From: Phallusia mammillata
Taxonomy: Eukaryota
NCBI GenBank assembly: GCA_965637545.1
Contig: OZ281499.1
Location: 19,406,001 to 19,470,000, forward strand
Direction: 5' to 3'
Length of the DNA stretch: 64,000 nucleotides
Numbering within the stretch: the stretch's first letter is position 1; every line of letters begins with the position of its first letter. This document shows positions 26,635-36,579 of this stretch, piece after piece. The notes under the pieces were generated by a model that saw only the letters and a program-made list of their open reading frames with translations, did not search any database and was not told the DNA's origin. Position numbers and translations under genes: made by a program.

Positions 26635-27148
26635 AGAAGTATGCACTACAAAGGGTTTTTATTGAAAACGATTTTGTACAAAAACTAGACAATACCAAAA
26701 AGTCGGTGGTAGTAATTTTGAGAAATTTTTCGATTGTAGAAAAATACTTATATAATGCACCAAAAAAGCAATAAAACAGACGTTTTGAAATTTGGGTTCA
26801 CGTACTCTGGCTCCAACAATAAAAATTGATTGTTATTGACAAATATGTTGCTTGTTAAACCTGCACCTAAAATACCAAATCCATTAGAAGTATGTACTTT
26901 TAAGGGTTTTTATTTAAAACGATTTTGTACAGAAACAAGGCATAATTACCATAAAAGTCGGTCGCATTAATTTACAAGGATTGTATCGAAAGAAAATACA
27001 AAGGTAATTGTAAAATTCATGTAAAAATAAGCAATAAAACAGTCGTTTTTAAATTTGGGTTTAGGCACTCTGGCTCCAAAATATAAGATTGTTATCCATG
27101 ATAAGTTTCCTTGTTAAAAACTTGCTCCTAAAATGTCAAACCTATTAG
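26635..27148. repeat. Diverged tandem duplication of a ~250-bp unit (related copy at ~18940-19045)
   Basis: Two units each begin agaagtatg(c/t)act..agggttttt...aaaacgattttgtaca and share aagcaataaaacag.cgtttt.aaatttgggtt...actctggctccaa. Confidence 0.8.
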
Positions 27149-30100
27149 GCGAGTGTCTTTCTGTCTTTGTTGAAGCTCATCATACGACCGATACGAGGAG
27201 CCGGGTTCATGTAACCATGTGGAGTTTCTGCATCATTTGCTGTTGCATCGTAACCTGGAGCTGGTGCATCTTCATCTTGTGCTACTTCAACTGGGAAGGG
27301 AGAGTCTCCTGCAACCTCTGCGTACTCGTGGAAGTCCGGATCGTCATCATCTCCGAATCCAGGAGGAACTGAAGAGCTTCCTGATGCCACATCTTTATCT
27401 ATCTCAACTGGATAATCTAACTGACCTGTTATTATATTACAAGTTTCCAGACCAACAAGTAAAAAGACCAGTCAAAACTGTTTCATAAAACATATTGAAA
27501 ATTTTGTTAAAAAAAGTTTCAGGTATTTATTTATTTGCCGAGCCCTTTTTTAGTTTGCTCAAAGAACATTAACTTCACGAGGGGTAAGCTTTATGAGTTT
27601 ACCCTTTTACACGATTTTAAACTTTAAATTAAAACTTTTACCCTTAAGCTATATCGATTTTAATGAAGTAAATCCCTGTGTTAAAGATTGACAAACGAAT
27701 TTTTTTCATTACAAAAATTTAACCCAAAGAATCATATGCTGCATAAGTAACACACTGACACAGTTTTCTGTAAACCGTACTTTTATCAAGGTCATCGATG
27801 TTGACTTTAGTTTGCTTTTTATCTTCGTTTTCCGTTTCATCTGTAGTTCCCTCCGCTGCTTCTCCTTTATAAATCATGTGTTTGTGATTAGCAATTTATT
27901 TTCTCTGCCAAGTGTATAACTTTAAACTAGTAGTGTTCAATGAACAACCGAAGTTTTCGACCGTTAAAAACGTTTTTTGGTCTTTTTGCTTTGTGTGTTG
28001 TTGAAACTTGTAAGCGATTTACAACTTGGCCCTGTCGTATCATGCCTTGCACTTAGTAAATAAGCAGAAAATAAAACAGTTTTAACAAACTTTCTTTCTC
28101 TAGTTCGGCCTCTTGATGCGCCTTCTCCGAAATAGCGTGTGTGATGTTTTTGTAAGCTTGCCTCCACCATGAGTAGTTTTCTTCATCTTCGCCTGAAAGC
28201 GCATCTGAAAAACAGATGTTGTTGCTTTCGAAATTGTGTTTGTACAGTTGATACCTTGCAGCAAAAATAAGTTGGAAAAAGACATCAAAATACTTCTGCA
28301 CAATGTACGGCCCCCTTTTGTTTCTTCACTATTGCAAGTCAAAAATATGTGAAATAATAACCTGTTTTGTGACCAAGGTGTCGCTTGTGTAGATTTGTCT
28401 CCTCATCAATATGTTCCAAAGTCTTATTAATTCTGTCCATTCTAGAATTAGTACGCGAACGGTTAAAGGTTATGCAAAATAGTTCAAGACGTAAACAGGC
28501 CCGAAAGCACTGCTATAAAGATCCTTTACATTTTACGTGCGATAGGTTAACTCTGTTTATGCACTGTATACTATAGTATTGCAATTCATTCAGCATCATT
28601 CCAACAGTGCAGATTCATGATTTGTGAAGTTTAAACTAGGGTGTGGTACAAACGCTGTTCTAAGTACCTGAAGGTTTTGCTCGACGTAATATTGATGGAC
28701 ACAAAAATGCTGTTATGATTAAAGAAATATTGTAATTGGTAACTTACCTATTAACCCAGTAGTCGTAACCTCCTTCCCATTCTTCGATCTGTTGATCCAG
28801 CTCTCTCTTCTCCTGATCTCTTCTCCTCCTCATTTCGGTCACCGGATCATCTTTGTTTTCTTTTTTGTCGCTTTTGTTGCGGAAATACCTCAAACGGGTA
28901 CGTTTCGACCAAGCCACCTAACAACGAATTAAGACATGCTAAATTTTGTTGGAAAATAAAATACTTTGGAAATAAATTAGTGTTAATTTCATTCCCACTA
29001 CTTGTTTACATTTTGTTTAATTGCATAAAACAGTTGCTGCTGATCGGTTACTTGAGTAAAGAATCTGTTAAAGAATAAATTAATGTTCTCAGTAACCCTA
29101 CCTCTCCAAAATGAACAAAGAGTGCGATGAAAGATCCAATAAGCAGAGTGATAAACATCCCTCCAAGATTTCCGATACCAAGTCGATTGGACTCGATGTC
29201 AAAAGAGGCTTCCTTGCATTCCGTTCTAAATGAAATAATATCACCAAAAAAGAGAAAAAGCAAATTTAAAAACGTTTGTAAGGTGTCATTTTTAGCAAAG
29301 ACTGAATCCATTTTGACACAGGTTTACACATTTATGCCATTGGCGTTTATAATGCAAAGTGCTCTGCAAATTCAGCTAACCTAAAGTTAAACCACTTGGC
29401 CTCCAGCTCTTGTAGTGTCCCGTCGTCCCTTAAAGAAGCAATTGCATCGCTAAAGACTGCGGTATATCTGGAGTTGAGTTGAAAAGGTAGGGCGTATTGG
29501 TACTCCCAAAAACCTATGCAAATAAGTTATATCACATACTTCATTTCTAAAACCAATATTTAAACGTGAACAGTACCTTCACCGACTCGGGCGTACTGAC
29601 AGCTAAGTTGTTCTGCTTTTGCTACAGCTCTAAACGGCGCCAGAAAATAAAAACTGCCCTCCGAAATTCTGTTGAAAGCGTCCTCAGTGGTGTTGAAGAT
29701 ATTTTCAGGTTTATCTTGCAGATGCTTCCAAATGGTGGTGAATGGTGTGGTTTCGGCGTACGGCAGAAAGTACTTAAGCATGTGAGCATCAACAGTTGTG
29801 CCGTAGTCAAAATGCTCCTAAAATTTAACCAATAAGGTTAAGTCACTTAATTTGGTCCAGAACAACACTAAACTAAAATCATGATCTTACGTTGTCAAGG
29901 CTATGCAGAAACTATTCATGATTTCGAACTAGATAGGGTTACAAAGGTTTCTAAAAGTATTGGTGGGGGAAGTTGATCGTACTAAAGTACCCAAACCTCA
30001 GTGTTTTACCGCGTAACGGTGTGAAACCTTTACCTGCGCTAACAACTCTTCAAGGTTGGCTACTTCCTCTGAGAACTCCTGGGTTAAAAAAGCTGTGAGA

Positions 30101-33100
30101 TTAGCGGTGTAAGCTGCTATGACGAGCATAGTGAAATACCACCAAGTCCCGGTAATCATTCTACCAGCATAGGAACGAGGTTCAATGTCAACTCCCTGGT
30201 GCACCAGACCACCATAAGTCATCCACATACTGTTACCGAATCCTGTGTGGTAAAACAAGTTGTTGCATATTTATGGTCAATGCAGTATAAATGCAGTATA
30301 GTCTTAAAAATGTACAATTAATTCTTCATAGTTGAATATGTGGTTTCCCACAAAACGGTCGGACAAAGATCAAAGACCTGATATCTTTTTTATAAACTCC
30401 TATGCCTGAATATATCTGTTTGTGTATTTTAGTAATTTTTCATTATTCTAAAAAACGTTTCATCTCTTATAATGTCTTGTGCTTTTTTTACACAAGAAAT
30501 ATACAAAAATATTCAATATTAAGTAACTTATGCACAAATCCATTTCTACCAAAATACATTATAACTTACATTAACCGTTGCATTATTTTTAACAAATCAA
30601 TAAACTTACCGAGCCTGTCAAAATTCTCCACCCCAACATCTTCATTTGTGTCATCCAGGGCAAGTTTTCTCCACTCAAACGGGTTGAAATGATTGACAAG
30701 AGCTAGCAGGAACGATACAACCACTAGAGAGGAGCAGAGAGCCACCCACGAATCAAACGTGAACGGTGCAAGAAACTGTAGAGGCCGAGATATATAACTC
30801 AAAATCGAAAGTTTATTTTAGCTGTCATATCTTGCTAAATGATGATACGTAAAATGATGTCAACTCAAGCTGCATTTAATTATATTAACCGGTTGTTGGT
30901 TTCGCCGAACATCACAAGTCAGTCCCTAGATTAAGGCGGAATTTGGTTGAATATTGAGTTGAGTTGATTTCGCTCGGTGAAAGAAAACATACCAACGCAA
31001 TTGTACTGAAGCATTTACTGAGTTACGGAGCGCAAAATAGTAGAACGCACAAATGGTGGGTGGTTAAGCATGCTCCATCAACGCTGTTATTACAAGGCGT
31101 GATGCGTTTTGTGTACATATCCGTACTTTATAAAAAAAATCACATTAGTCAAATACCAAAAAGGTCACAAATCAAATTTGTTTTATTTACATTCTTTGGA
31201 TCACTGATTAAATTATATTTGAGCACATACCAAACGTATACCTGCCATATGTTGACTGGTTGTTCGTTCCCAGATGCTAGAGTAACCATGAAATAGGACA
31301 CTTGCTGAAACGCAATGGAAAGTTCTTCGCTTCCCAAATACCCACCAAGTATGGATCGAGTGTATAAGACAAATTCGACCTGTAGAACAAAAATTGCGCC
31401 ATAATCATAGGGGTTATAGGGGTCGGGGTCGGCTTATGGCAAAAGTTTGATTAAAATAGACTTGATTTGGGCCTGGATTTACACCCGGCCTCATTTGTCC
31501 CTTTTCATCAAGTTTTGGGCTGAATTCCCGGCTGTGTTTTCAACCATTTAAAGTTCGGTTTGGGTGTTAAGCTTGTACCTTTGGGTTCTGGTGCCTATTT
31601 CGTGCCTGCTTTGTGCAGAACTTCTATAAGATTCTTAGTTTTTACGATAAAAGATTACGACTTGTTTCTCAGCTTTTAAATTTTACACTCGAACATTGAG
31701 TATATAATTGATATTTTACAATGACTGACCTCTTTGTTCCTCAACATTCGATTTACTTCTTCTCCTGTTTCGGCGTCATTCAAGCGGTCGGCGCCAGTTC
31801 GTTCGTTCCAGTAGAGCTCGTATTTGAAGTTCAGTCGCCTTGACAAAGTTTCAATCAAGTCGATCAGGAATCCCTCGTATGTTGTCTCTTGCGTCACCTC
31901 GTTTGTGTGCCATTTTACCCAGGGTAGCTCCTGTAAAGCCAAGTTATCAACGTGAATGCTGCGTCGTACACAGTTATTAACCATTCGCAATGAATCGCTT
32001 TTTACGGGGTTTAATGGGGCCCACGATTAATTATAGAATTGTAAAGTGAGCCCAGGCTTTTTGGGCTCAGACTTAAATTTGTATGTGGGACTTTATTCCG
32101 GCTTGTGTCCCAATTTTACCAACTTTAGGTACTATTTTGGACTGCGTTGTTTTTAAATTAGGTTCAGACAAGGTCTGGCCCGCTTGCAACTCTGATAAAC
32201 ATTTGTGCAGTGAAGTAAATATGTAAAAAATTACATGTCTTTTGAACTGTGTGAACAAAAATCACACGGTATTTAAAATTTTACTTACATAAACTATTCC
32301 CACTTTGAGAGGTTTTTCCGGAAATACGACAGCAGCTTGAACGAAAGGAATGTAACCCGGTTGAAAGGATTTGTCCTTCCAATAACCTTGCTAAAAAGAG
32401 AATAAAATTATTATTAGCAGTCAAAGTAATAATGGAACATAAAAAAAATTGGGAATGATGCAAGTAAGAGTTTTGTGAAGCCGTGAATAGGAAGCATAAA
32501 AGTGTAGGAAGAGTTTAGTATTTTTATATGAATGCAATTATAAATAAAACTTGTAGCAGAAGCACTTACTAGAGACATTACGCCCTTTTCATTTCCAAGA
32601 TGATGTTCCAGAAATTCAATCCTGTTTGGTCCGATTTCATTTAAACCTCTCATGTATAGCTCAGTACAAGTTCCGACAGAGTAATACTGAAACAAACTTT
32701 GTTTTATTTTGCGAATTTCATGTCCAAATATATGAAAAGTTATGAAGGGTGATGCAAAATTGAGTCGCACTTTTTCTCCCTTTGAAAAGCTTACCGAGGC
32801 TCGCTACATGCAAACGTTTTTGAAACCAATTTTAGCAGTAAGTGCAGTAAGATTAGTATCGACTTACCGAGCCTTCCGAGAAACTTTTTGCACCTTGGTC
32901 GATTCCACATTGACTATCGTCCGACAAAGGAACGTCGAAACATCCGATAGAAATCGCAGTTTGGCAAGATTGTCCGATTCTCCTCAGAGCGTCTCTTGTC
33001 ACAACTGAAAAGTTAAGTTATGTGTTACAATTCAAACCCAGCGTACAAAATCAAGTCAGACAGAATCAACCGCCATGCGATTTCGGTTCTGTAATATACC

Positions 33101-36100
33101 GGTGTAAAGAATGTATCCACCGAATAGTTGATACTGAAGGGTAGTATAAACTACATTTTTACTTCAACCTATGATGCCAAGGGTCCAACTTGATTCGGTT
33201 ACTAATTGCTTGGTAGTCAAACTTATACTTTCATGACAACGCGTGGCGTACAACTTCTTGCGACTTCTTATAAATCATTCGGTTGATTCGGTCGAATTTA
33301 CTCAGCAAAACCGCCGAATTTCGGTTTCGGCCGAATCGAAATTTCGCCGATTAGGTACATCACTAATAAAAACAATGATCAAGCGCAATGCGGTTTTTCA
33401 AGATTGAAGTTTGTTAAACGCTGTTTTTTTAACACCCAACCTATTTACAACACAATCGCTTAAGCGACGTAAGACAGTTTCATAATCACAAAGGGGTCAA
33501 GTTGCATTTAAGTTTCCTTATTGTAACCTGTTATAATGTCGTCCCTTGTTTCTCGTTCAGACAATCCCAGAAGGTAGTCGGTCTCCAGAATTTCACGAAT
33601 CGTCTTCGAGCTGATCACAGTCAAACGCACACTGGATTCCAAAAAGTCTTGCAGAAGCAGAGGATGGGTTTCCTGCAGATACAATTTGTGTTTGTGAAAC
33701 ATAACAATGTCCCACAACTAAATAAACGTAATCGGTTTGCATAGTAAAGATCAAGTTTGCCGTTTTAAAGACAATTTTAGTACCTTTACTCGTATCGCAT
33801 ATTTCTCGAAATCCAGTTTTACACCCTGTGTGGCCATTTCAATGACTGCTAGACTTAAATATTTAATAATTATATATCTTTGCATAGTTCAGCATTTTTT
33901 AGCGCAAAAGCGAGTGTTCCGCTACATGTCAGTTAAAATATGCATTACTGCAGTGTTTAAAGTTAAAATAAACCTTCGATGTTGCTATTTCCAAGTAAAA
34001 ATATTGTTTAAGTTTTCTGCATGCTGCGTGTTCTTTTTTATGTGTTTCAGGCCAACTTACAATGTTGGGAAGGAACCAGTGGTTGACTTCGCTGACCATC
34101 GAGAGAAACACAGCCTTGGTAAGAACCGATGTGGCAATCTTGTGGTCGCAGATCAAAATGTACGTTCGATATCCGAGAAGACGAACAGACTGGAACACAG
34201 AAAATAAATGGAATTGATGTCTATAGCTTGTTACACTGTAGAAAGATATATAATGTGAAAATATGTGCTGAGAAGCTAATACGAACAGACCAACGCAACA
34301 AGCAACAGGGCTTTGTGGTTCCGCCTTAAGCAGGCTTTCCACCTTAGCTGCGTAGCTCATCAGTTGGTTAAGGAGTAGACCAGGATCGGCTCTTGTCGTG
34401 GGTTCGAATCCCAGCGTGATGAGTTTTTATGTGCCTTGTAGTATTGGATATGCTTGCGAGGCCGTCTTGATTCAATAAACAGCGCTTCTAAAATACCCTT
34501 TTCGTGCCAAGATATGAAATATCGCTACATTTACATCACCTTGTGCTAGTTGAGATAGATTTAATTTGCGGACAAATGGAATTTTAATTACTACTTTGTT
34601 GGTTTAACTGCTGTAATACGATTTAGTCCTTTTTACCAGCAATTGTGAATAAGCTGCTGCTCAGAAATTCAGGCCAAATGAGGCGTATCGCATAATTACC
34701 GAGTTGCTATACGGATTGCCATACCACCAATTGCTGTTCACAAGCGTTCAGCGCGATCATACAGTAGCATGCAACGTAGTACAGAAAACAGAGTCATGTT
34801 CTTACGTGTAGATTGATATTGCCAAGACTTTTATCTCTGGTATTGTTTATTTATGCTTTATTCACTTACTTTTAGGATATCCCACATTTTTTCCTGGTCT
34901 TCAGGTATCACCCAAACTTTTAAGTTAATGCCCCGTTGGCGAGCTAAATCCAAATCTTGGTATCCGAATGCAAGTTCTGATCGAAAAGGAGAAGTAGGTC
35001 ACAAAACTGCTTTTAGGGTTTATTTTAAAATTTGAATTGCGGTGTCCCCGTTTGACAAACAGCCAAAAGTATTACTTAATTTGAACGTCGAAATTTTATT
35101 TGTTTGTTTACTGTATATGTTAGTTCTCTTTTCTATTTGAGAATTTATTTGTGCCGTTTTTTATAGGGTAATCAAAGTATAAGTACTTACCACTACTTAC
35201 CAGAACTTGTTTATGTTTTATGAAACTGTTTAACAGTCTTTTTAATCCTATATTGCAGTAGTTCTCAAACTGTGCGTCGCGACGCCCTGGTGCGTCGTTT
35301 AAATTGTCCAAGGGCGTCGCAGAATATTCGTTTCGTTTTGTTGTTGTATCCATAAACGCAACTTTAATAAAAAGTTTCCTCATTAACTTTTATTTGATAG
35401 TGCGTCGCAAGTGCAGAAAACGTTTCCAGAGGCGTCGCAACAACAAAAAGTTTGAGAACCACTGCTATATTGTTTCGACTGTATATATTGATGTTGTTTC
35501 TATCGAGTTACTGTTTAAAATTAGTGATAATATGCCTGTTTATTCTCTTCACAACGATAAACAGGAACAGGTATTTTCAGTTCCGGTTTAATTAAAACAT
35601 TTCCCTACCTTCATTTCCATCATAAAACACTGCCGCAGTTTTCCACTCGTATTTTTCTATTGCGTCATACATTGCCATCATGACGTCAAAATGGGACGGA
35701 AACATGTACATTAGAAAATCGTCACCTGGTTCACAATGCTAAAAGCAAGCAAATTGCAATTCACAGAAAACTTACAGTTTTTCAAAAACATATAGCCTAT
35801 TCTAAAACGCCAAGATAGTCTAGTGTTAAACGCCAGCGTTCACAAAGTTGCTGGTTCTAAACCTTTCTAGGCCACTTGTTTTTCCATGCAAAAATCTAAG
35901 CGACTTTACTCCCACCCTACGGGTTTGAACCATTAACAAACTCCTGAAATCTATTAAAAACGATTTAAAGGACATTTAATAATACAAACAAGCATAACAT
36001 GAAGCTTGCTTCTTCTCAATACATTAATTGGACTGTTAAATGCACATTTAAAAAGACAGTTATAACATAACAAACCTCTCGGACCATGCCAATGAAAAAC

Positions 36101-36579
36101 ACTGTAACTGCTTGCTTTAGTTCAATCATTGCTGTACAATTGACCTGTTTGGCCAGGATAAAGAGACTTGAAACTTTGGCTGCAGTTATCATTTCTGAAA
36201 AAAATGTGTCATTTGTAGGCTTAGTCTCAAAAATTTGGATGAGTTTTATTTGAACAAGACAACAGACAAGTACATATATTTTAAGTTTAACCTACATATG
36301 TTTGGACCACAAAAGGCTTGTTCAGTCATTTGCAGTTAGGTTCAGCGAAAAAAGGTTTTGCAACTTACCGACTATGTTTGTCATGTTATCCTGGAAAAAC
36401 ACTTGTAGATTGACGTACAGCGGAGACTCATCGATTGCCGCGTAAAAACTTGGTAGTGAAGGTTCATAAAATGAGTCGTAAATGACTGCAGTCTCGATAA
36501 TAGTTCTGTCTCCATTGATAGGCATCGCTACTATTCCAATCAAAAATGCAGCAATACCTATGCCAAAAACCTTGCACAT
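27145..36579 (-). CDS. Ionotropic glutamate receptor family subunit (divergent; non-NMDA-like), 21 coding exons, ~991 aa
   Basis: GT-AG exons with consistent phases: 36579-36369, 36179-36076, 35895-35863, 35738-35609, 34976-34870, 33672-33528, 33004-32868, 32686-32570, 32390-32289, 31930-31730, 31379-31242, 30775-30610, 30242-30034, 29817-29577, 29513-29381, 29225-29102, 28917-28748, 28328-28255, 28192-28091, 27864-27781, 27392-27145 (sum 2976 nt, no stops). Signal peptide MCKVFGIGIAAFLIGIVAMPING; ATD; S1 YEGFLIDLIETL; M1 FLAPFTFDSW; M2 SMWMTYGGLVHQG; M3 WWYFTMLVIAAYTANLTAFLT; S2; M4 LGIGNLGGMFITL. Confidence 0.9.
31415..31610. mobile_element. Degenerate 'cccggcccga' family MITE in iGluR intron
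   Basis: ttataggggtcggggtcggctt resembles the reverse complement of the family terminus, and tttgggc repeats follow. Boundaries are approximate. Confidence 0.4.
32034..32194. mobile_element. Short 'cccggcccga' family MITE in iGluR intron
   Basis: Ends tagaattgtaaagtgagcccaggc / ggtctggcccgcttgcaactctg, degenerate versions of the family TIR. Confidence 0.55.
33271..33365. mobile_element. 3' fragment of the same MITE family as 46-522
   Basis: aaatcattcggttgattcg...ttcggtttcggccgaat...cgattaggtacatcacta matches the right end of the 46-522 element. Confidence 0.7.
34347..34480 (+). mobile_element. tRNA-derived SINE head in iGluR intron
   Basis: A-box-like tagctcatcagttggtt and B-box ggttcgaatcc (34401-34411). 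It does not fold into a complete cloverleaf. Confidence 0.6.
35256..35464. mobile_element. hAT-type MITE (209 bp) in iGluR intron
   Basis: TIRs cagtagttctcaaact / agtttgagaaccactg, perfect 8-bp TSD ctatattg, and internal gcgtcgc repeats. Confidence 0.92.

What the first reader, a model, noticed from the sequence alone, without database searches (positions are those of the whole stretch)
29577..31379. iGluR-family subunit that has lost the canonical glutamate-binding residues
Seen: S1 reads VEFVLYTRSILGGYLGSEELSIAF where GluA2 has [24 protein letters not shown], so the invariant alpha-carboxyl-binding Arg (R485) aligns to Tyr. S2 reads YGTTVDAHMLKYF for YGTLDSGSTKEFF (S654/T655 become H/M), and FYFLAPFRA for YAYLLESTM (E705 becomes P). 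The gene still has 21 intact exons, a signal peptide, an ATD and a conserved channel core. Established: these residues coordinate glutamate in AMPA/kainate receptors, and their loss typifies insect chemosensory IRs and some divergent classes. Inference: this is a receptor for a non-glutamate ligand or stimulus, or a modulatory subunit; it could be an independent IR-like repurposing in a non-insect lineage. The alignments are manual.
Basis: partly seen in the sequence, partly recalled or inferred. Interest (0 to 1): 0.75.

Follow-up and report, generated by a model that had tools for sequence, protein, structure and literature searches.

The report
Divergent sea-squirt glutamate receptor subunit
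A sea-squirt gene encodes an intact, evolutionarily conserved glutamate-receptor-type channel subunit whose binding pocket has lost the residues that normally hold an amino acid. It belongs to a small tunicate branch related to the little-studied 'Phi' receptors, where such losses were already described.

Summary
I built a 17-exon, 860-aa minus-strand gene model (window 36579-28744, every intron GT-AG). A profile alignment and an independent MAFFT alignment place the same residues at the rat GluA2 positions: Tyr at R485, Pro at E705, His/Met at S654/T655, Thr at Y450 and Phe at S706. The gene is not decaying. All 17 exons are conserved on contigs of four other, unidentified species, with pN 0.11 against saturated pS 0.87-0.89, and the pore exon is the best conserved.

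It is not a one-off. The genome (Phallusia) has three such paralogs, and relatives of the other two are annotated in Ciona and Styela. All lack an acid at 705 and carry Phe or Tyr at 706. Most keep Arg at 485; the window's orthologs show Y, K, K or R there. A maximum-likelihood tree (UFBoot 100; AU tests reject two alternatives) and shared indels and motifs put the clade next to amphioxus Phi-class (GluF) receptors. The 2018 metazoan survey already described loss of R485/E705 in that class, but reported the class as lost in tunicates and vertebrates.

The most likely function is a channel subunit that does not bind amino acids and acts independently of an agonist. That is inference only. No RNA evidence was found, and the spliced protein could not be folded.

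The parts
36369..36579 (-). Exon 1: start codon (36579-36577), hydrophobic signal-peptide-like N-terminus (residues 1-19), start of the amino-terminal domain (ATD)
   Evidence: Gene model. Hydropathy peak at residues 1-19. Conserved in L031.
36076..36194 (-). Exon 2 (ATD)
   Evidence: AG/GT boundaries. 74% aa identity to L031.
35609..35738 (-). Exon 3 (ATD; matches Pfam ANF_receptor)
   Evidence: Pfam PF01094 E=0.002. HMM ATD domain E=6e-17. Ortholog match.
34870..34976 (-). Exon 4 (ATD)
34061..34189 (-). Exon 5 (ATD)
   Evidence: 86% aa identity to L031
33528..33672 (-). Exon 6 (ATD)
32868..33004 (-). Exon 7 (ATD)
32570..32686 (-). Exon 8 (ATD)
32289..32390 (-). Exon 9 (ATD-S1 linker)
   Evidence: 91% aa identity to L026
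31730..31930 (-). Exon 10: S1a, first half of the ligand-binding domain. Thr444 sits at the GluA2 Y450 position. The WNGM.GEL motif of canonical iGluRs is absent.
   Evidence: Pfam PF10613 E=3e-8. Alignments.
31242..31379 (-). Exon 11: S1b. Thr473/Ser475 sit at P478/T480, and Tyr480 (codon 31340-31338) sits at the alpha-carboxyl-binding R485 position.
   Evidence: Orthologs have K, K and R at this position.
30610..30775 (-). Exon 12: pre-M1 (QFLAPF), M1 and the NPFEWR motif
   Evidence: Pfam PF00060. Hydropathy. Motifs shared with Phi.
30034..30242 (-). Exon 13: pore loop M2 (His582 at the Q/R site, Asp586 at +4), M3 and the gating motif AYTANLTAF. This is the most conserved exon.
   Evidence: Pfam PF00060 E=7.6e-21. 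dN 0.038 against L026. Residues.
29577..29817 (-). Exon 14: S2a. Ala648/His649/Met650 sit at G653/S654/T655. Pro698/Phe699 (29637-29632) sit at E705/S706.
   Evidence: 'LAP[FY]' is kept in all five species.
29381..29513 (-). Exon 15: S2b, with QYALPF in place of the canonical GYGIA.P
29102..29225 (-). Exon 16: M4
   Evidence: Hydropathy peak at residues 782-800. HMM match.
28744..28917 (-). Exon 17: cytoplasmic tail with the conserved W-x-G-G-Y/W motif and the stop codon (28746-28744)
   Evidence: A stop follows directly in L027 and L031 too.

Best explanation
SHOWN. The window holds a complete, selectively maintained gene for a pore-forming iGluR-family subunit: signal peptide, ATD, S1/S2 clamshell, M1-M4 and a near-canonical AYTANLTAF gate. 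It is one of three paralogs (A = this gene; B = C5:7.65 Mb; C = C6:0.96 Mb) that form a tunicate-specific clade. In my trees that clade is sister to the amphioxus Phi (GluF) class of the AKDF subfamily. Its ligand-binding domain lacks what every amino-acid-gated iGluR uses to hold the ligand backbone: Tyr replaces R485, Pro replaces E705, and Y450, S654 and T655 are gone. INFERRED. The subunit does not bind glutamate or glycine in the canonical way. My preferred mechanism (about 40%) is that the conserved non-acidic residue at 705 plus the aromatic residue at 706 bias the clamshell so that it no longer needs an agonist. That would make the subunit constitutively 'on' or a leak-type channel, either alone or as a ligand-independent partner of paralogs B and C, which mostly keep the Arg. 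The precedents are GluN1 D732L/F and the Trichoplax AKDF-19383 Tyr-Tyr leak channel.
For: Gene model of 17 GT-AG exons and 860 aa without stops. Pfam ANF_receptor, Lig_chan-Glu_bd and Lig_chan hits on single exons; full-length profile match at E=1.9e-102. Residue equivalences are identical by HMM and by MAFFT. All 17 exons are conserved on contigs from other species, L026-L032. pN is 0.107 against pS 0.86-0.89 for the closest ortholog, dS is saturated, and the pore exon has dN 0.038. The stop codon is conserved. The genome is identified through P0011 (Phallusia mammillata CAB3250886.1), which maps at 90-98% to C5:7.647-7.660 Mb. The third paralog is on C6. Ciona and Styela members were found. 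In the IQ-TREE analysis the family is monophyletic (UFBoot 100) and sister to amphioxus Phi (UFBoot 100). The Phi label was checked: P0205 carries four exact GluF2_Bla motifs from the eLife alignment. AU tests reject placing the family outside Phi plus the other AKDF receptors (p=0.005) or with own_C1 (p=0.009). Rare shared characters: loss of the WNGM.GEL motif, QF[LM]APF, NP.E[WY], [QHM].A[LF]PF, and a one-residue deletion after position 706. Position 705 is P or S and 706 is F or Y in every tunicate member. Experimental precedent for hydrophobic residues at this position causing constitutive activity: bioRxiv 10.1101/2023.08.03.551817.
Against: No function was measured. Pro at 705 is not one of the residues tested by Seljeset et al. 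(L, F, Y), and they state that predicting activity from this residue alone is tenuous. Orthologs keep K or R at 485, and the paralogs mostly keep R, so some carboxylate-bearing ligand could still bind in relatives. No exon of the gene is covered in four RNA-like runs of the species; these are contigs only, so this does not prove silence. No full-length A-type protein exists in the 1.8-billion representative library. The sister relation to Phi joins two long branches under a site-homogeneous model. No verified Epsilon sequence and no hemichordate, echinoderm or mollusc Phi sequence was in the tree. I could not fold the spliced protein.
Confidence: 0.6

Rival explanations
1. It is a receptor for a ligand that is not an alpha-amino acid, or for another stimulus. 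The clamshell still closes on an agonist, but the pocket has been rebuilt, as in insect tuning IRs.
For: The LBD exons are under purifying selection rather than drifting (dN 0.13-0.20 against saturated dS). Several replaced pocket residues are conserved among orthologs, for example LAP[FY] and YG..D[AS][HD]. The pore and gate are intact.
Against: Position 485 differs among close orthologs (Y, K, K, R), which is unexpected for a tuned pocket. There is no expression or sensory-cell evidence. No candidate ligand is known.
Confidence: 0.2
2. It still binds a small amino acid or carboxylate by a non-canonical geometry, and the loss of the named residues only lowers potency or changes selectivity.
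For: Ser at the T480 position is kept. Orthologs have K or R at 485 and the paralogs mostly R. In several relatives an acidic residue lies two positions after 706 (APFGE, ASFE). Trichoplax AKDF-19383 still responds to millimolar glycine and D-serine despite lacking the acid.
Against: In the window's protein Tyr replaces the Arg, Pro replaces the acid and Arg-Ala follow (LAPFRA), so neither charge is available nearby. R485 is conserved in 97% of 204 iGluRs and the acid in 92%.
Confidence: 0.12
3. It is a delta-like, essentially non-conducting subunit that acts through its extracellular domains in adhesion or signalling.
For: The ATD is retained and conserved. It has an orphan-like LBD.
Against: The pore and gate exon is the most strongly conserved part of the gene (dN 0.038). 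The tree places the gene away from the delta-like clade (P0052, own C6b/C5a). It lacks the W-D motif of that clade.
Confidence: 0.06
4. It is an unexpressed or decaying gene copy, or the residue 'losses' come from mis-splicing or misalignment.
For: No RNA contig covers any exon in four RNA-like runs. The protein is absent from public protein sets. Pfam does not recognise exons 11 and 14 on their own.
Against: The 860 codons are open across 17 canonical introns. Every exon is conserved in other species at pN/pS of about 0.12. The stop codon is conserved. Two independent alignment methods agree. In two orthologs the S1b and M1 exons are fused, which confirms that junction.
Confidence: 0.02

Closest known systems
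Phi class (GluF) of the AKDF iGluR subfamily, amphioxus members (GluF1/GluF2; NCBI P0205 = GluF2_Bla, P0204, P0030, P0080)
   Same: Sister group in the tree (UFBoot 100; AU test). Both lack the WNGM.GEL motif, have pre-M1 QF[LM]APF, the [QHM].A[LF]PF motif and a one-residue deletion after position 706. Backbone-binding residues are often lost: P at 705 in P0030, P0080 and P0199, and Y or G at 485 in P0080 and P0199. That loss was published for amphioxus Phi (PMC6307864).
   Different: The host is a tunicate, and Phi was reported as lost in Olfactores. The tunicate clade has F or Y at 706 and lacks the Tyr at 653 typical of amphioxus Phi. It forms its own long branch, so it may be a sister class rather than a member. 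Only amphioxus Phi sequences were in my tree.
Trichoplax adhaerens AKDF-19383 leak channel and the GluN1 D732L/F mutants (Seljeset et al., bioRxiv 10.1101/2023.08.03.551817)
   Same: The conserved acid at the 705/732 position is replaced, and the following small residue is replaced by an aromatic one (Y742-Y743 in Trichoplax; P698-F699 here). Both are AKDF-type subunits with an intact pore.
   Different: The residue here is Pro (Ser in paralogs B and C), not Tyr, Leu or Phe. Trichoplax keeps the Arg. The two are not orthologous. Function is untested here.
Insect and protostome chemosensory ionotropic receptors (IRs)
   Same: They are iGluR-derived subunits that have lost R485, T480 or E705 in various combinations and act in heteromers with co-receptors.
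   Different: IRs form a protostome radiation; this gene groups with deuterostome Phi. It keeps a full ATD and a near-canonical gate. It is single-copy with two paralogs, not an expanded family (about 9 iGluR loci in the genome). No sensory expression is known.
Kainate receptor GluK2 (closest solved structures, e.g. 8gc2, 7ks0)
   Same: GluK2 is the best sequence match in the PDB for paralog B of the family (E=1.8e-43 over LBD plus TMD). The overall architecture is the same.
   Different: Only about 25% identity to canonical AKDF receptors. GluK2 has R, S/T and E at the ligand positions; this protein does not.
Ciona Epsilon receptors GluE1_Cin and GluE2_Cin of Ramos-Vicente et al. 2018
   Same: These are the only tunicate 'non-classical' iGluRs listed in that study. 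The M3 motif YTANLTAF also occurs in Trichoplax Epsilon sequences.
   Different: Their sequences were not in the stored part of the supplement, so identity could not be tested. Epsilon is described as having an M1-M2 loop insertion and a canonical S1, neither of which is seen here. The intron-poor locus C1:22.98 Mb, which does have such an insertion, is a better Epsilon candidate.

Membership tests
iGluR superfamily (ATD-LBD-TMD tetrameric ligand-gated channels) | Pore module M1-M2-M3 with a SYTANLAAF-type gating motif, plus M4 | tested here: met
   PF00060 E=7.6e-21 on exon 13. AYTANLTAF matches 7 of 9 positions. M1 and M4 hydropathy peaks. Full-length profile match at E=1.9e-102.
iGluR superfamily (ATD-LBD-TMD tetrameric ligand-gated channels) | Bilobed S1/S2 ligand-binding domain interrupted by the pore module, and an N-terminal ANF-type domain | tested here: met
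   PF10613 E=3e-8 on S1a and PF01094 on exon 3. HMM domains cover the ATD (E=6e-17) and LBD-TMD (E=3e-89) in the canonical order.
Amino-acid-gated iGluRs (AMPA, kainate, NMDA, most Epsilon) | Arg at GluA2-485 that binds the ligand alpha-carboxylate | tested here: not met
   Tyr480 by HMM and by MAFFT. Orthologs have K, K and R.
Amino-acid-gated iGluRs (AMPA, kainate, NMDA, most Epsilon) | Asp or Glu at GluA2-705 that binds the ligand alpha-amino group | tested here: not met
   Pro698. Pro in all five A-type species and Ser in paralogs B and C.
Glutamate-selective AMPA/kainate receptors | Gly/Ser653, Ser654 and Thr655 in S2, and the aromatic Tyr450 lid | tested here: not met
   Ala648, His649, Met650 and Thr444.
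Phi class (GluF) of AKDF | Phylogenetic grouping with reference GluF sequences | tested here: met
   Sister to amphioxus GluF with UFBoot 100. AU tests reject two alternatives, p=0.005 and 0.009. The reference label was verified by exact motifs from the published alignment. Caveats: long branches, the LG+G4 model, only amphioxus Phi included, and the clade is sister to Phi rather than nested in it.
Phi class (GluF) of AKDF | Published taxonomic range (cephalochordates, hemichordates, echinoderms, later molluscs; absent from Olfactores) | tested here: not met
   The gene is in Phallusia, with relatives in Ciona and Styela. The published range is stated in PMC6307864 and PMC8437780.
Epsilon subfamily | Grouping with Epsilon sequences; M1-M2 loop insertion | tested here: inconclusive
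   No loop insertion, and a constraint with the Epsilon-like locus own_C1 is rejected. However, no verified Epsilon sequence was available to the tree, and the Ciona GluE sequences were not in the stored supplement.
Delta (GluD) class | Grouping with delta receptors; W-D/E at positions 704-705 | tested here: not met
   The delta-like clade (P0052, own C6b, own C5a) is separate. This gene has A-P where that clade has W-D/E.
Protostome chemosensory IRs | Membership of the IR radiation (IR25a/IR8a co-receptors plus tuning IRs) | not tested
   No bona fide IR sequence was included. The gene sits with deuterostome Phi rather than in the AMPA/kainate part of the tree.

The most novel reading that the evidence does not exclude
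Tunicates, the closest invertebrate relatives of vertebrates, kept a Phi-related iGluR lineage that the literature counts as lost in Olfactores. The A-type member in this window would be an agonist-independent (leak or pre-activated) channel subunit, or a sensor for something other than an amino acid. That would be a second, independent natural case of the 'acid-to-hydrophobic' switch known from Trichoplax, this time in a chordate.
Probability: 0.3. Interest if true: 0.6.

Novelty: new member of a known kind. Interest (0 to 1): 0.42.

Why it matters
The Phi and 'uncharacterised AKDF' receptors are the least understood part of the iGluR tree; recent electrophysiology papers say so explicitly. 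If the tunicate clade really is Phi-related, the class was not lost at the base of Olfactores, only in vertebrates. Ciona and Phallusia, with their small mapped larval nervous systems, would then be a tractable place to learn what such receptors do. The conserved Pro/Ser-Phe/Tyr pair at positions 705-706 gives a direct natural test of the proposal that this position decides between ligand-gated and constitutively active iGluRs. The general fact that some invertebrate iGluRs lack R485/E705 is already published, so the surprise for a specialist is moderate.

Tried and rejected
1. PDB searches with single exons. S1b gave nothing, and S2a gave only E of about 0.7 to GluK3 and GluA3. This was too weak to use alone, although it was consistent with the later alignments.

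2. Tools that need a sequence reference could not receive the spliced protein. So there was no AlphaFold model, no fold search, no complex prediction and no word-index search for the window's own protein.

3. The representative search with the M3 exon found only short single-exon fragments of orthologs. It found no full-length A-type protein.

4. RNA evidence. Two run searches and one lay of four RNA-like runs showed no exon coverage. Only short repeat matches appeared, in two introns. These are contigs, so this does not show that the gene is silent.

Paralog C and C5c were therefore too incomplete for the tree.

6. IQ-TREE with LG+F+R5 on 91 sequences failed once (too many threads requested) and then timed out. 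I used 48 sequences with LG+G4 instead. No site-heterogeneous model was run.

7. The eLife alignment supplement is truncated and does not include the Ciona GluE sequences. I could not test whether the tunicate clade is what that paper called GluE1_Cin and GluE2_Cin.

8. Cluster look-ups gave no species names for the ortholog contigs.

9. I considered the upstream Arg in 'YTRS' as a substitute for R485 and rejected it. It aligns to L479 and is itself not conserved (H in one ortholog; K or M in paralogs).

10. I considered a pseudogene and rejected it.

Full report
WHAT IS THERE. The finding lies inside a multi-exon gene on the minus strand. Six-frame translation shows the quoted S1 and S2 strings and the flanking M1, M2-M3 and M4 segments. 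Pfam recognises single exons as ANF_receptor, Lig_chan-Glu_bd and Lig_chan.

I placed the splice sites using canonical GT-AG signals together with exon-only conservation on contigs from other species. The result is a model of 17 coding exons: start codon at 36579, stop at 28746-28744, 860 residues, no internal stop, and every intron GT-AG. The protein matches a profile of 40 full-length iGluRs at E=1.9e-102, with the ATD and LBD-TMD parts in the normal order. It has a hydrophobic N-terminus and M1 and M4 hydropathy peaks. The stop after the last Arg is present in two orthologs as well.

CHECK OF THE OBSERVATION. The profile alignment (hmmalign with rat GluA2 P0297 as ruler) and an independent MAFFT L-INS-i alignment agree residue for residue:
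- R485 is Tyr480.
- E705 is Pro698.
- S706 is Phe699.
- G653/S654/T655 are Ala/His/Met.
- Y450 is Thr.
- P478/T480 are Thr/Ser.
- The Q/R site is His, and the +4 Asp is kept.

The S1b stretch aligns without gaps between conserved anchors, so the manual alignment was sound. The six canonical iGluR loci of the same genome (AMPA-like C7, kainate-like C5b, two delta-like loci, and C1 and C5c) keep R485; the five whose S2 was recovered (all but C5c) keep an acid at 705.

IS IT A LIVE GENE? The M3 exon pulled out four short ortholog fragments. Their contigs carry the other exons. They are four JGI metagenome contigs of one species (L026-L029) and three Logan contigs (L030-L032).
- All 17 exons are found on the 15.5-kb contig L031, next to a connexin gene, which points to a chordate source.
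- Introns do not align; only exons do.
- Against the closest ortholog, amino-acid identity is 83%, pN is 0.107 and pS is 0.86-0.89. Synonymous sites are therefore saturated and the uncorrected ratio of 0.12 is an upper bound.
- The pore exon is the most constrained (dN 0.038) and S2a the least (dN 0.20).

This rules out a pseudogene. I found no expression evidence. RNA-like runs of the species hold none of the exon words, and contigs from four such runs cover no exon, only short intronic repeats. That is weak negative evidence.

WHAT THE RELATIVES SHOW.
- At the 485 position the A-type orthologs read Y (window), K, K and R.
- At 705 all read Pro, and at 706 all read Phe or Tyr.
- The best full-length relative, P0011 (38% identity over LBD-TMD-tail), is a Phallusia mammillata protein. 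It maps to C5:7.647-7.660 Mb of this genome at 90-98% per exon. This identifies the genome and defines paralog B.
- A third paralog, C, lies at C6:0.954-0.965 Mb and resembles Ciona LOC100177658.
- Ciona and Styela each have annotated B- and C-type proteins.
- B- and C-type proteins mostly keep Arg at 485, but all have Ser at 705 and Phe or Tyr at 706.

So the loss of the acid and the gain of an aromatic neighbour are old and shared across the clade. The loss of the Arg is recent and particular to the Phallusia A copy.

CLASSIFICATION. The nearest non-tunicate proteins are amphioxus proteins (P0030, P0080). A search from P0030 returned only Branchiostoma paralogs ahead of vertebrate GluA2. Two of them can be tied to the published Phi class. 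P0205 contains four exact motifs of GluF2_Bla as printed in the eLife 2018 alignment, and P0204 resembles GluF1.
- On 433 LBD-TMD columns, FastTree and IQ-TREE (LG+G4, 1000 UFBoot) recover the tunicate clade (100) as sister to amphioxus Phi (100).
- AU tests reject placing it outside Phi plus the other AKDF receptors (p=0.005) or with the Epsilon-like locus C1 (p=0.009).
- Characters independent of branch length agree: absence of the WNGM.GEL motif, QF[LM]APF before M1, NP.E[WY] after M1, [QHM].A[LF]PF instead of GYGIA.P, and a one-residue deletion after 706.
- Amphioxus Phi proteins show the same kind of pocket erosion, including P at 705 and Y or G at 485.

Caveats: both groups are long branches; the model is site-homogeneous; and no verified Epsilon sequence and no non-amphioxus Phi sequence was in the tree. 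Sister position leaves open whether this is Phi proper or a neighbouring class.

WHAT IS ALREADY KNOWN. Ramos-Vicente et al. 2018 reported that 28 of 122 iGluRs from the newly described groups lack R485 and/or the acid at 705, 'particularly' amphioxus Phi. They also reported that Phi seems lost in protostomes and Olfactores, and they list only two Ciona genes, both as Epsilon. A 2021 scallop paper extended Phi to molluscs. I found no paper placing Phi-type receptors in tunicates, but the searchable library is incomplete. Recent work calls Phi and related AKDF branches uncharacterised.

HOW IT PROBABLY WORKS (inference). The strongest constraint is on the pore and gate, so ion conduction is probably retained. 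Without Arg485, the acid at 705, Tyr450 and Ser/Thr654-655, canonical binding of an alpha-amino acid is not expected. Seljeset et al. showed two relevant things. Hydrophobic replacements of the same acid (GluN1 D732L/F) make a subunit active without its agonist. And a natural Tyr-Tyr pair at the equivalent of positions 705-706 turns a Trichoplax AKDF receptor into a leak channel. The clade-wide non-acidic 705 plus aromatic 706 pair is the closest parallel.

I therefore favour an agonist-independent subunit, either a leak-type homomer or a pre-activated partner of paralogs B and C, at about 40%. The alternatives are a rebuilt pocket for a non-amino-acid ligand (about 20%), residual low-affinity amino-acid binding (about 12%) and a delta-like non-conducting role (about 6%). 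The variability of position 485 among close orthologs fits a site released from its old job.

VERDICT. The new elements are its presence in tunicates, the three-paralog clade with a conserved 705-706 signature, and the fact that the A-type gene is absent from public protein sets.

Noticed in passing
window 30955-30991 and 33270-33374 (introns of the gene): Short stretches matched at 90-95% by many abundant contigs in all four RNA-like runs, with unrelated flanks. They look like dispersed, transcribed repeats and not like exons of this gene.
   Followed up: no
window 28744-28749: The stop codon sits in AGG|TAAGT, a near-consensus splice donor. An alternative longer C-terminus by splicing past the stop is conceivable. 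An acidic, proline-rich 108-codon open frame lies downstream on the same strand at 27148-27471.
   Followed up: no
G000:C1:22.980-22.984 Mb (L001, L014): An intron-poor iGluR locus (open frames of 443 and 231 aa) with canonical R485 and D705, an extended M1-M2 loop and the motif SYTANLAGVVL. It branches outside the AKDF receptors and is a candidate Epsilon-type gene of this genome. C5:13.40 Mb looks related.
   Followed up: partly
L030, L031, L032 compared with window exons 11-13: Intron turnover between species. In the three Logan orthologs the M2-M3 exon is split by an extra intron. In L030 and L031 the S1b and M1 exons are fused, where the window has a 466-bp intron.
   Followed up: partly
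L026-L029 (JGI metagenomes 3300027611, 3300001689, 3300001463, 3300001539): Contigs of 10-31 kb filed as metagenome carry an orthologous multi-exon tunicate gene, with 96% aa identity in the M3 exon. They are animal host DNA inside 'microbial' data sets.
   Followed up: no
G000:C6:0.954-0.965 Mb and window (C6:19.43 Mb): Paralog C and the window's gene lie on the same chromosome-scale contig about 18.5 Mb apart. Paralog B is on C5.
   Followed up: no
P0016 (Seison nebaliae KAI3380582.1): A very long-branched rotifer iGluR attaches as sister to the Phi plus tunicate group (UFBoot 99). This could be long-branch attraction or a further Phi-like lineage in a protostome.
   Followed up: no
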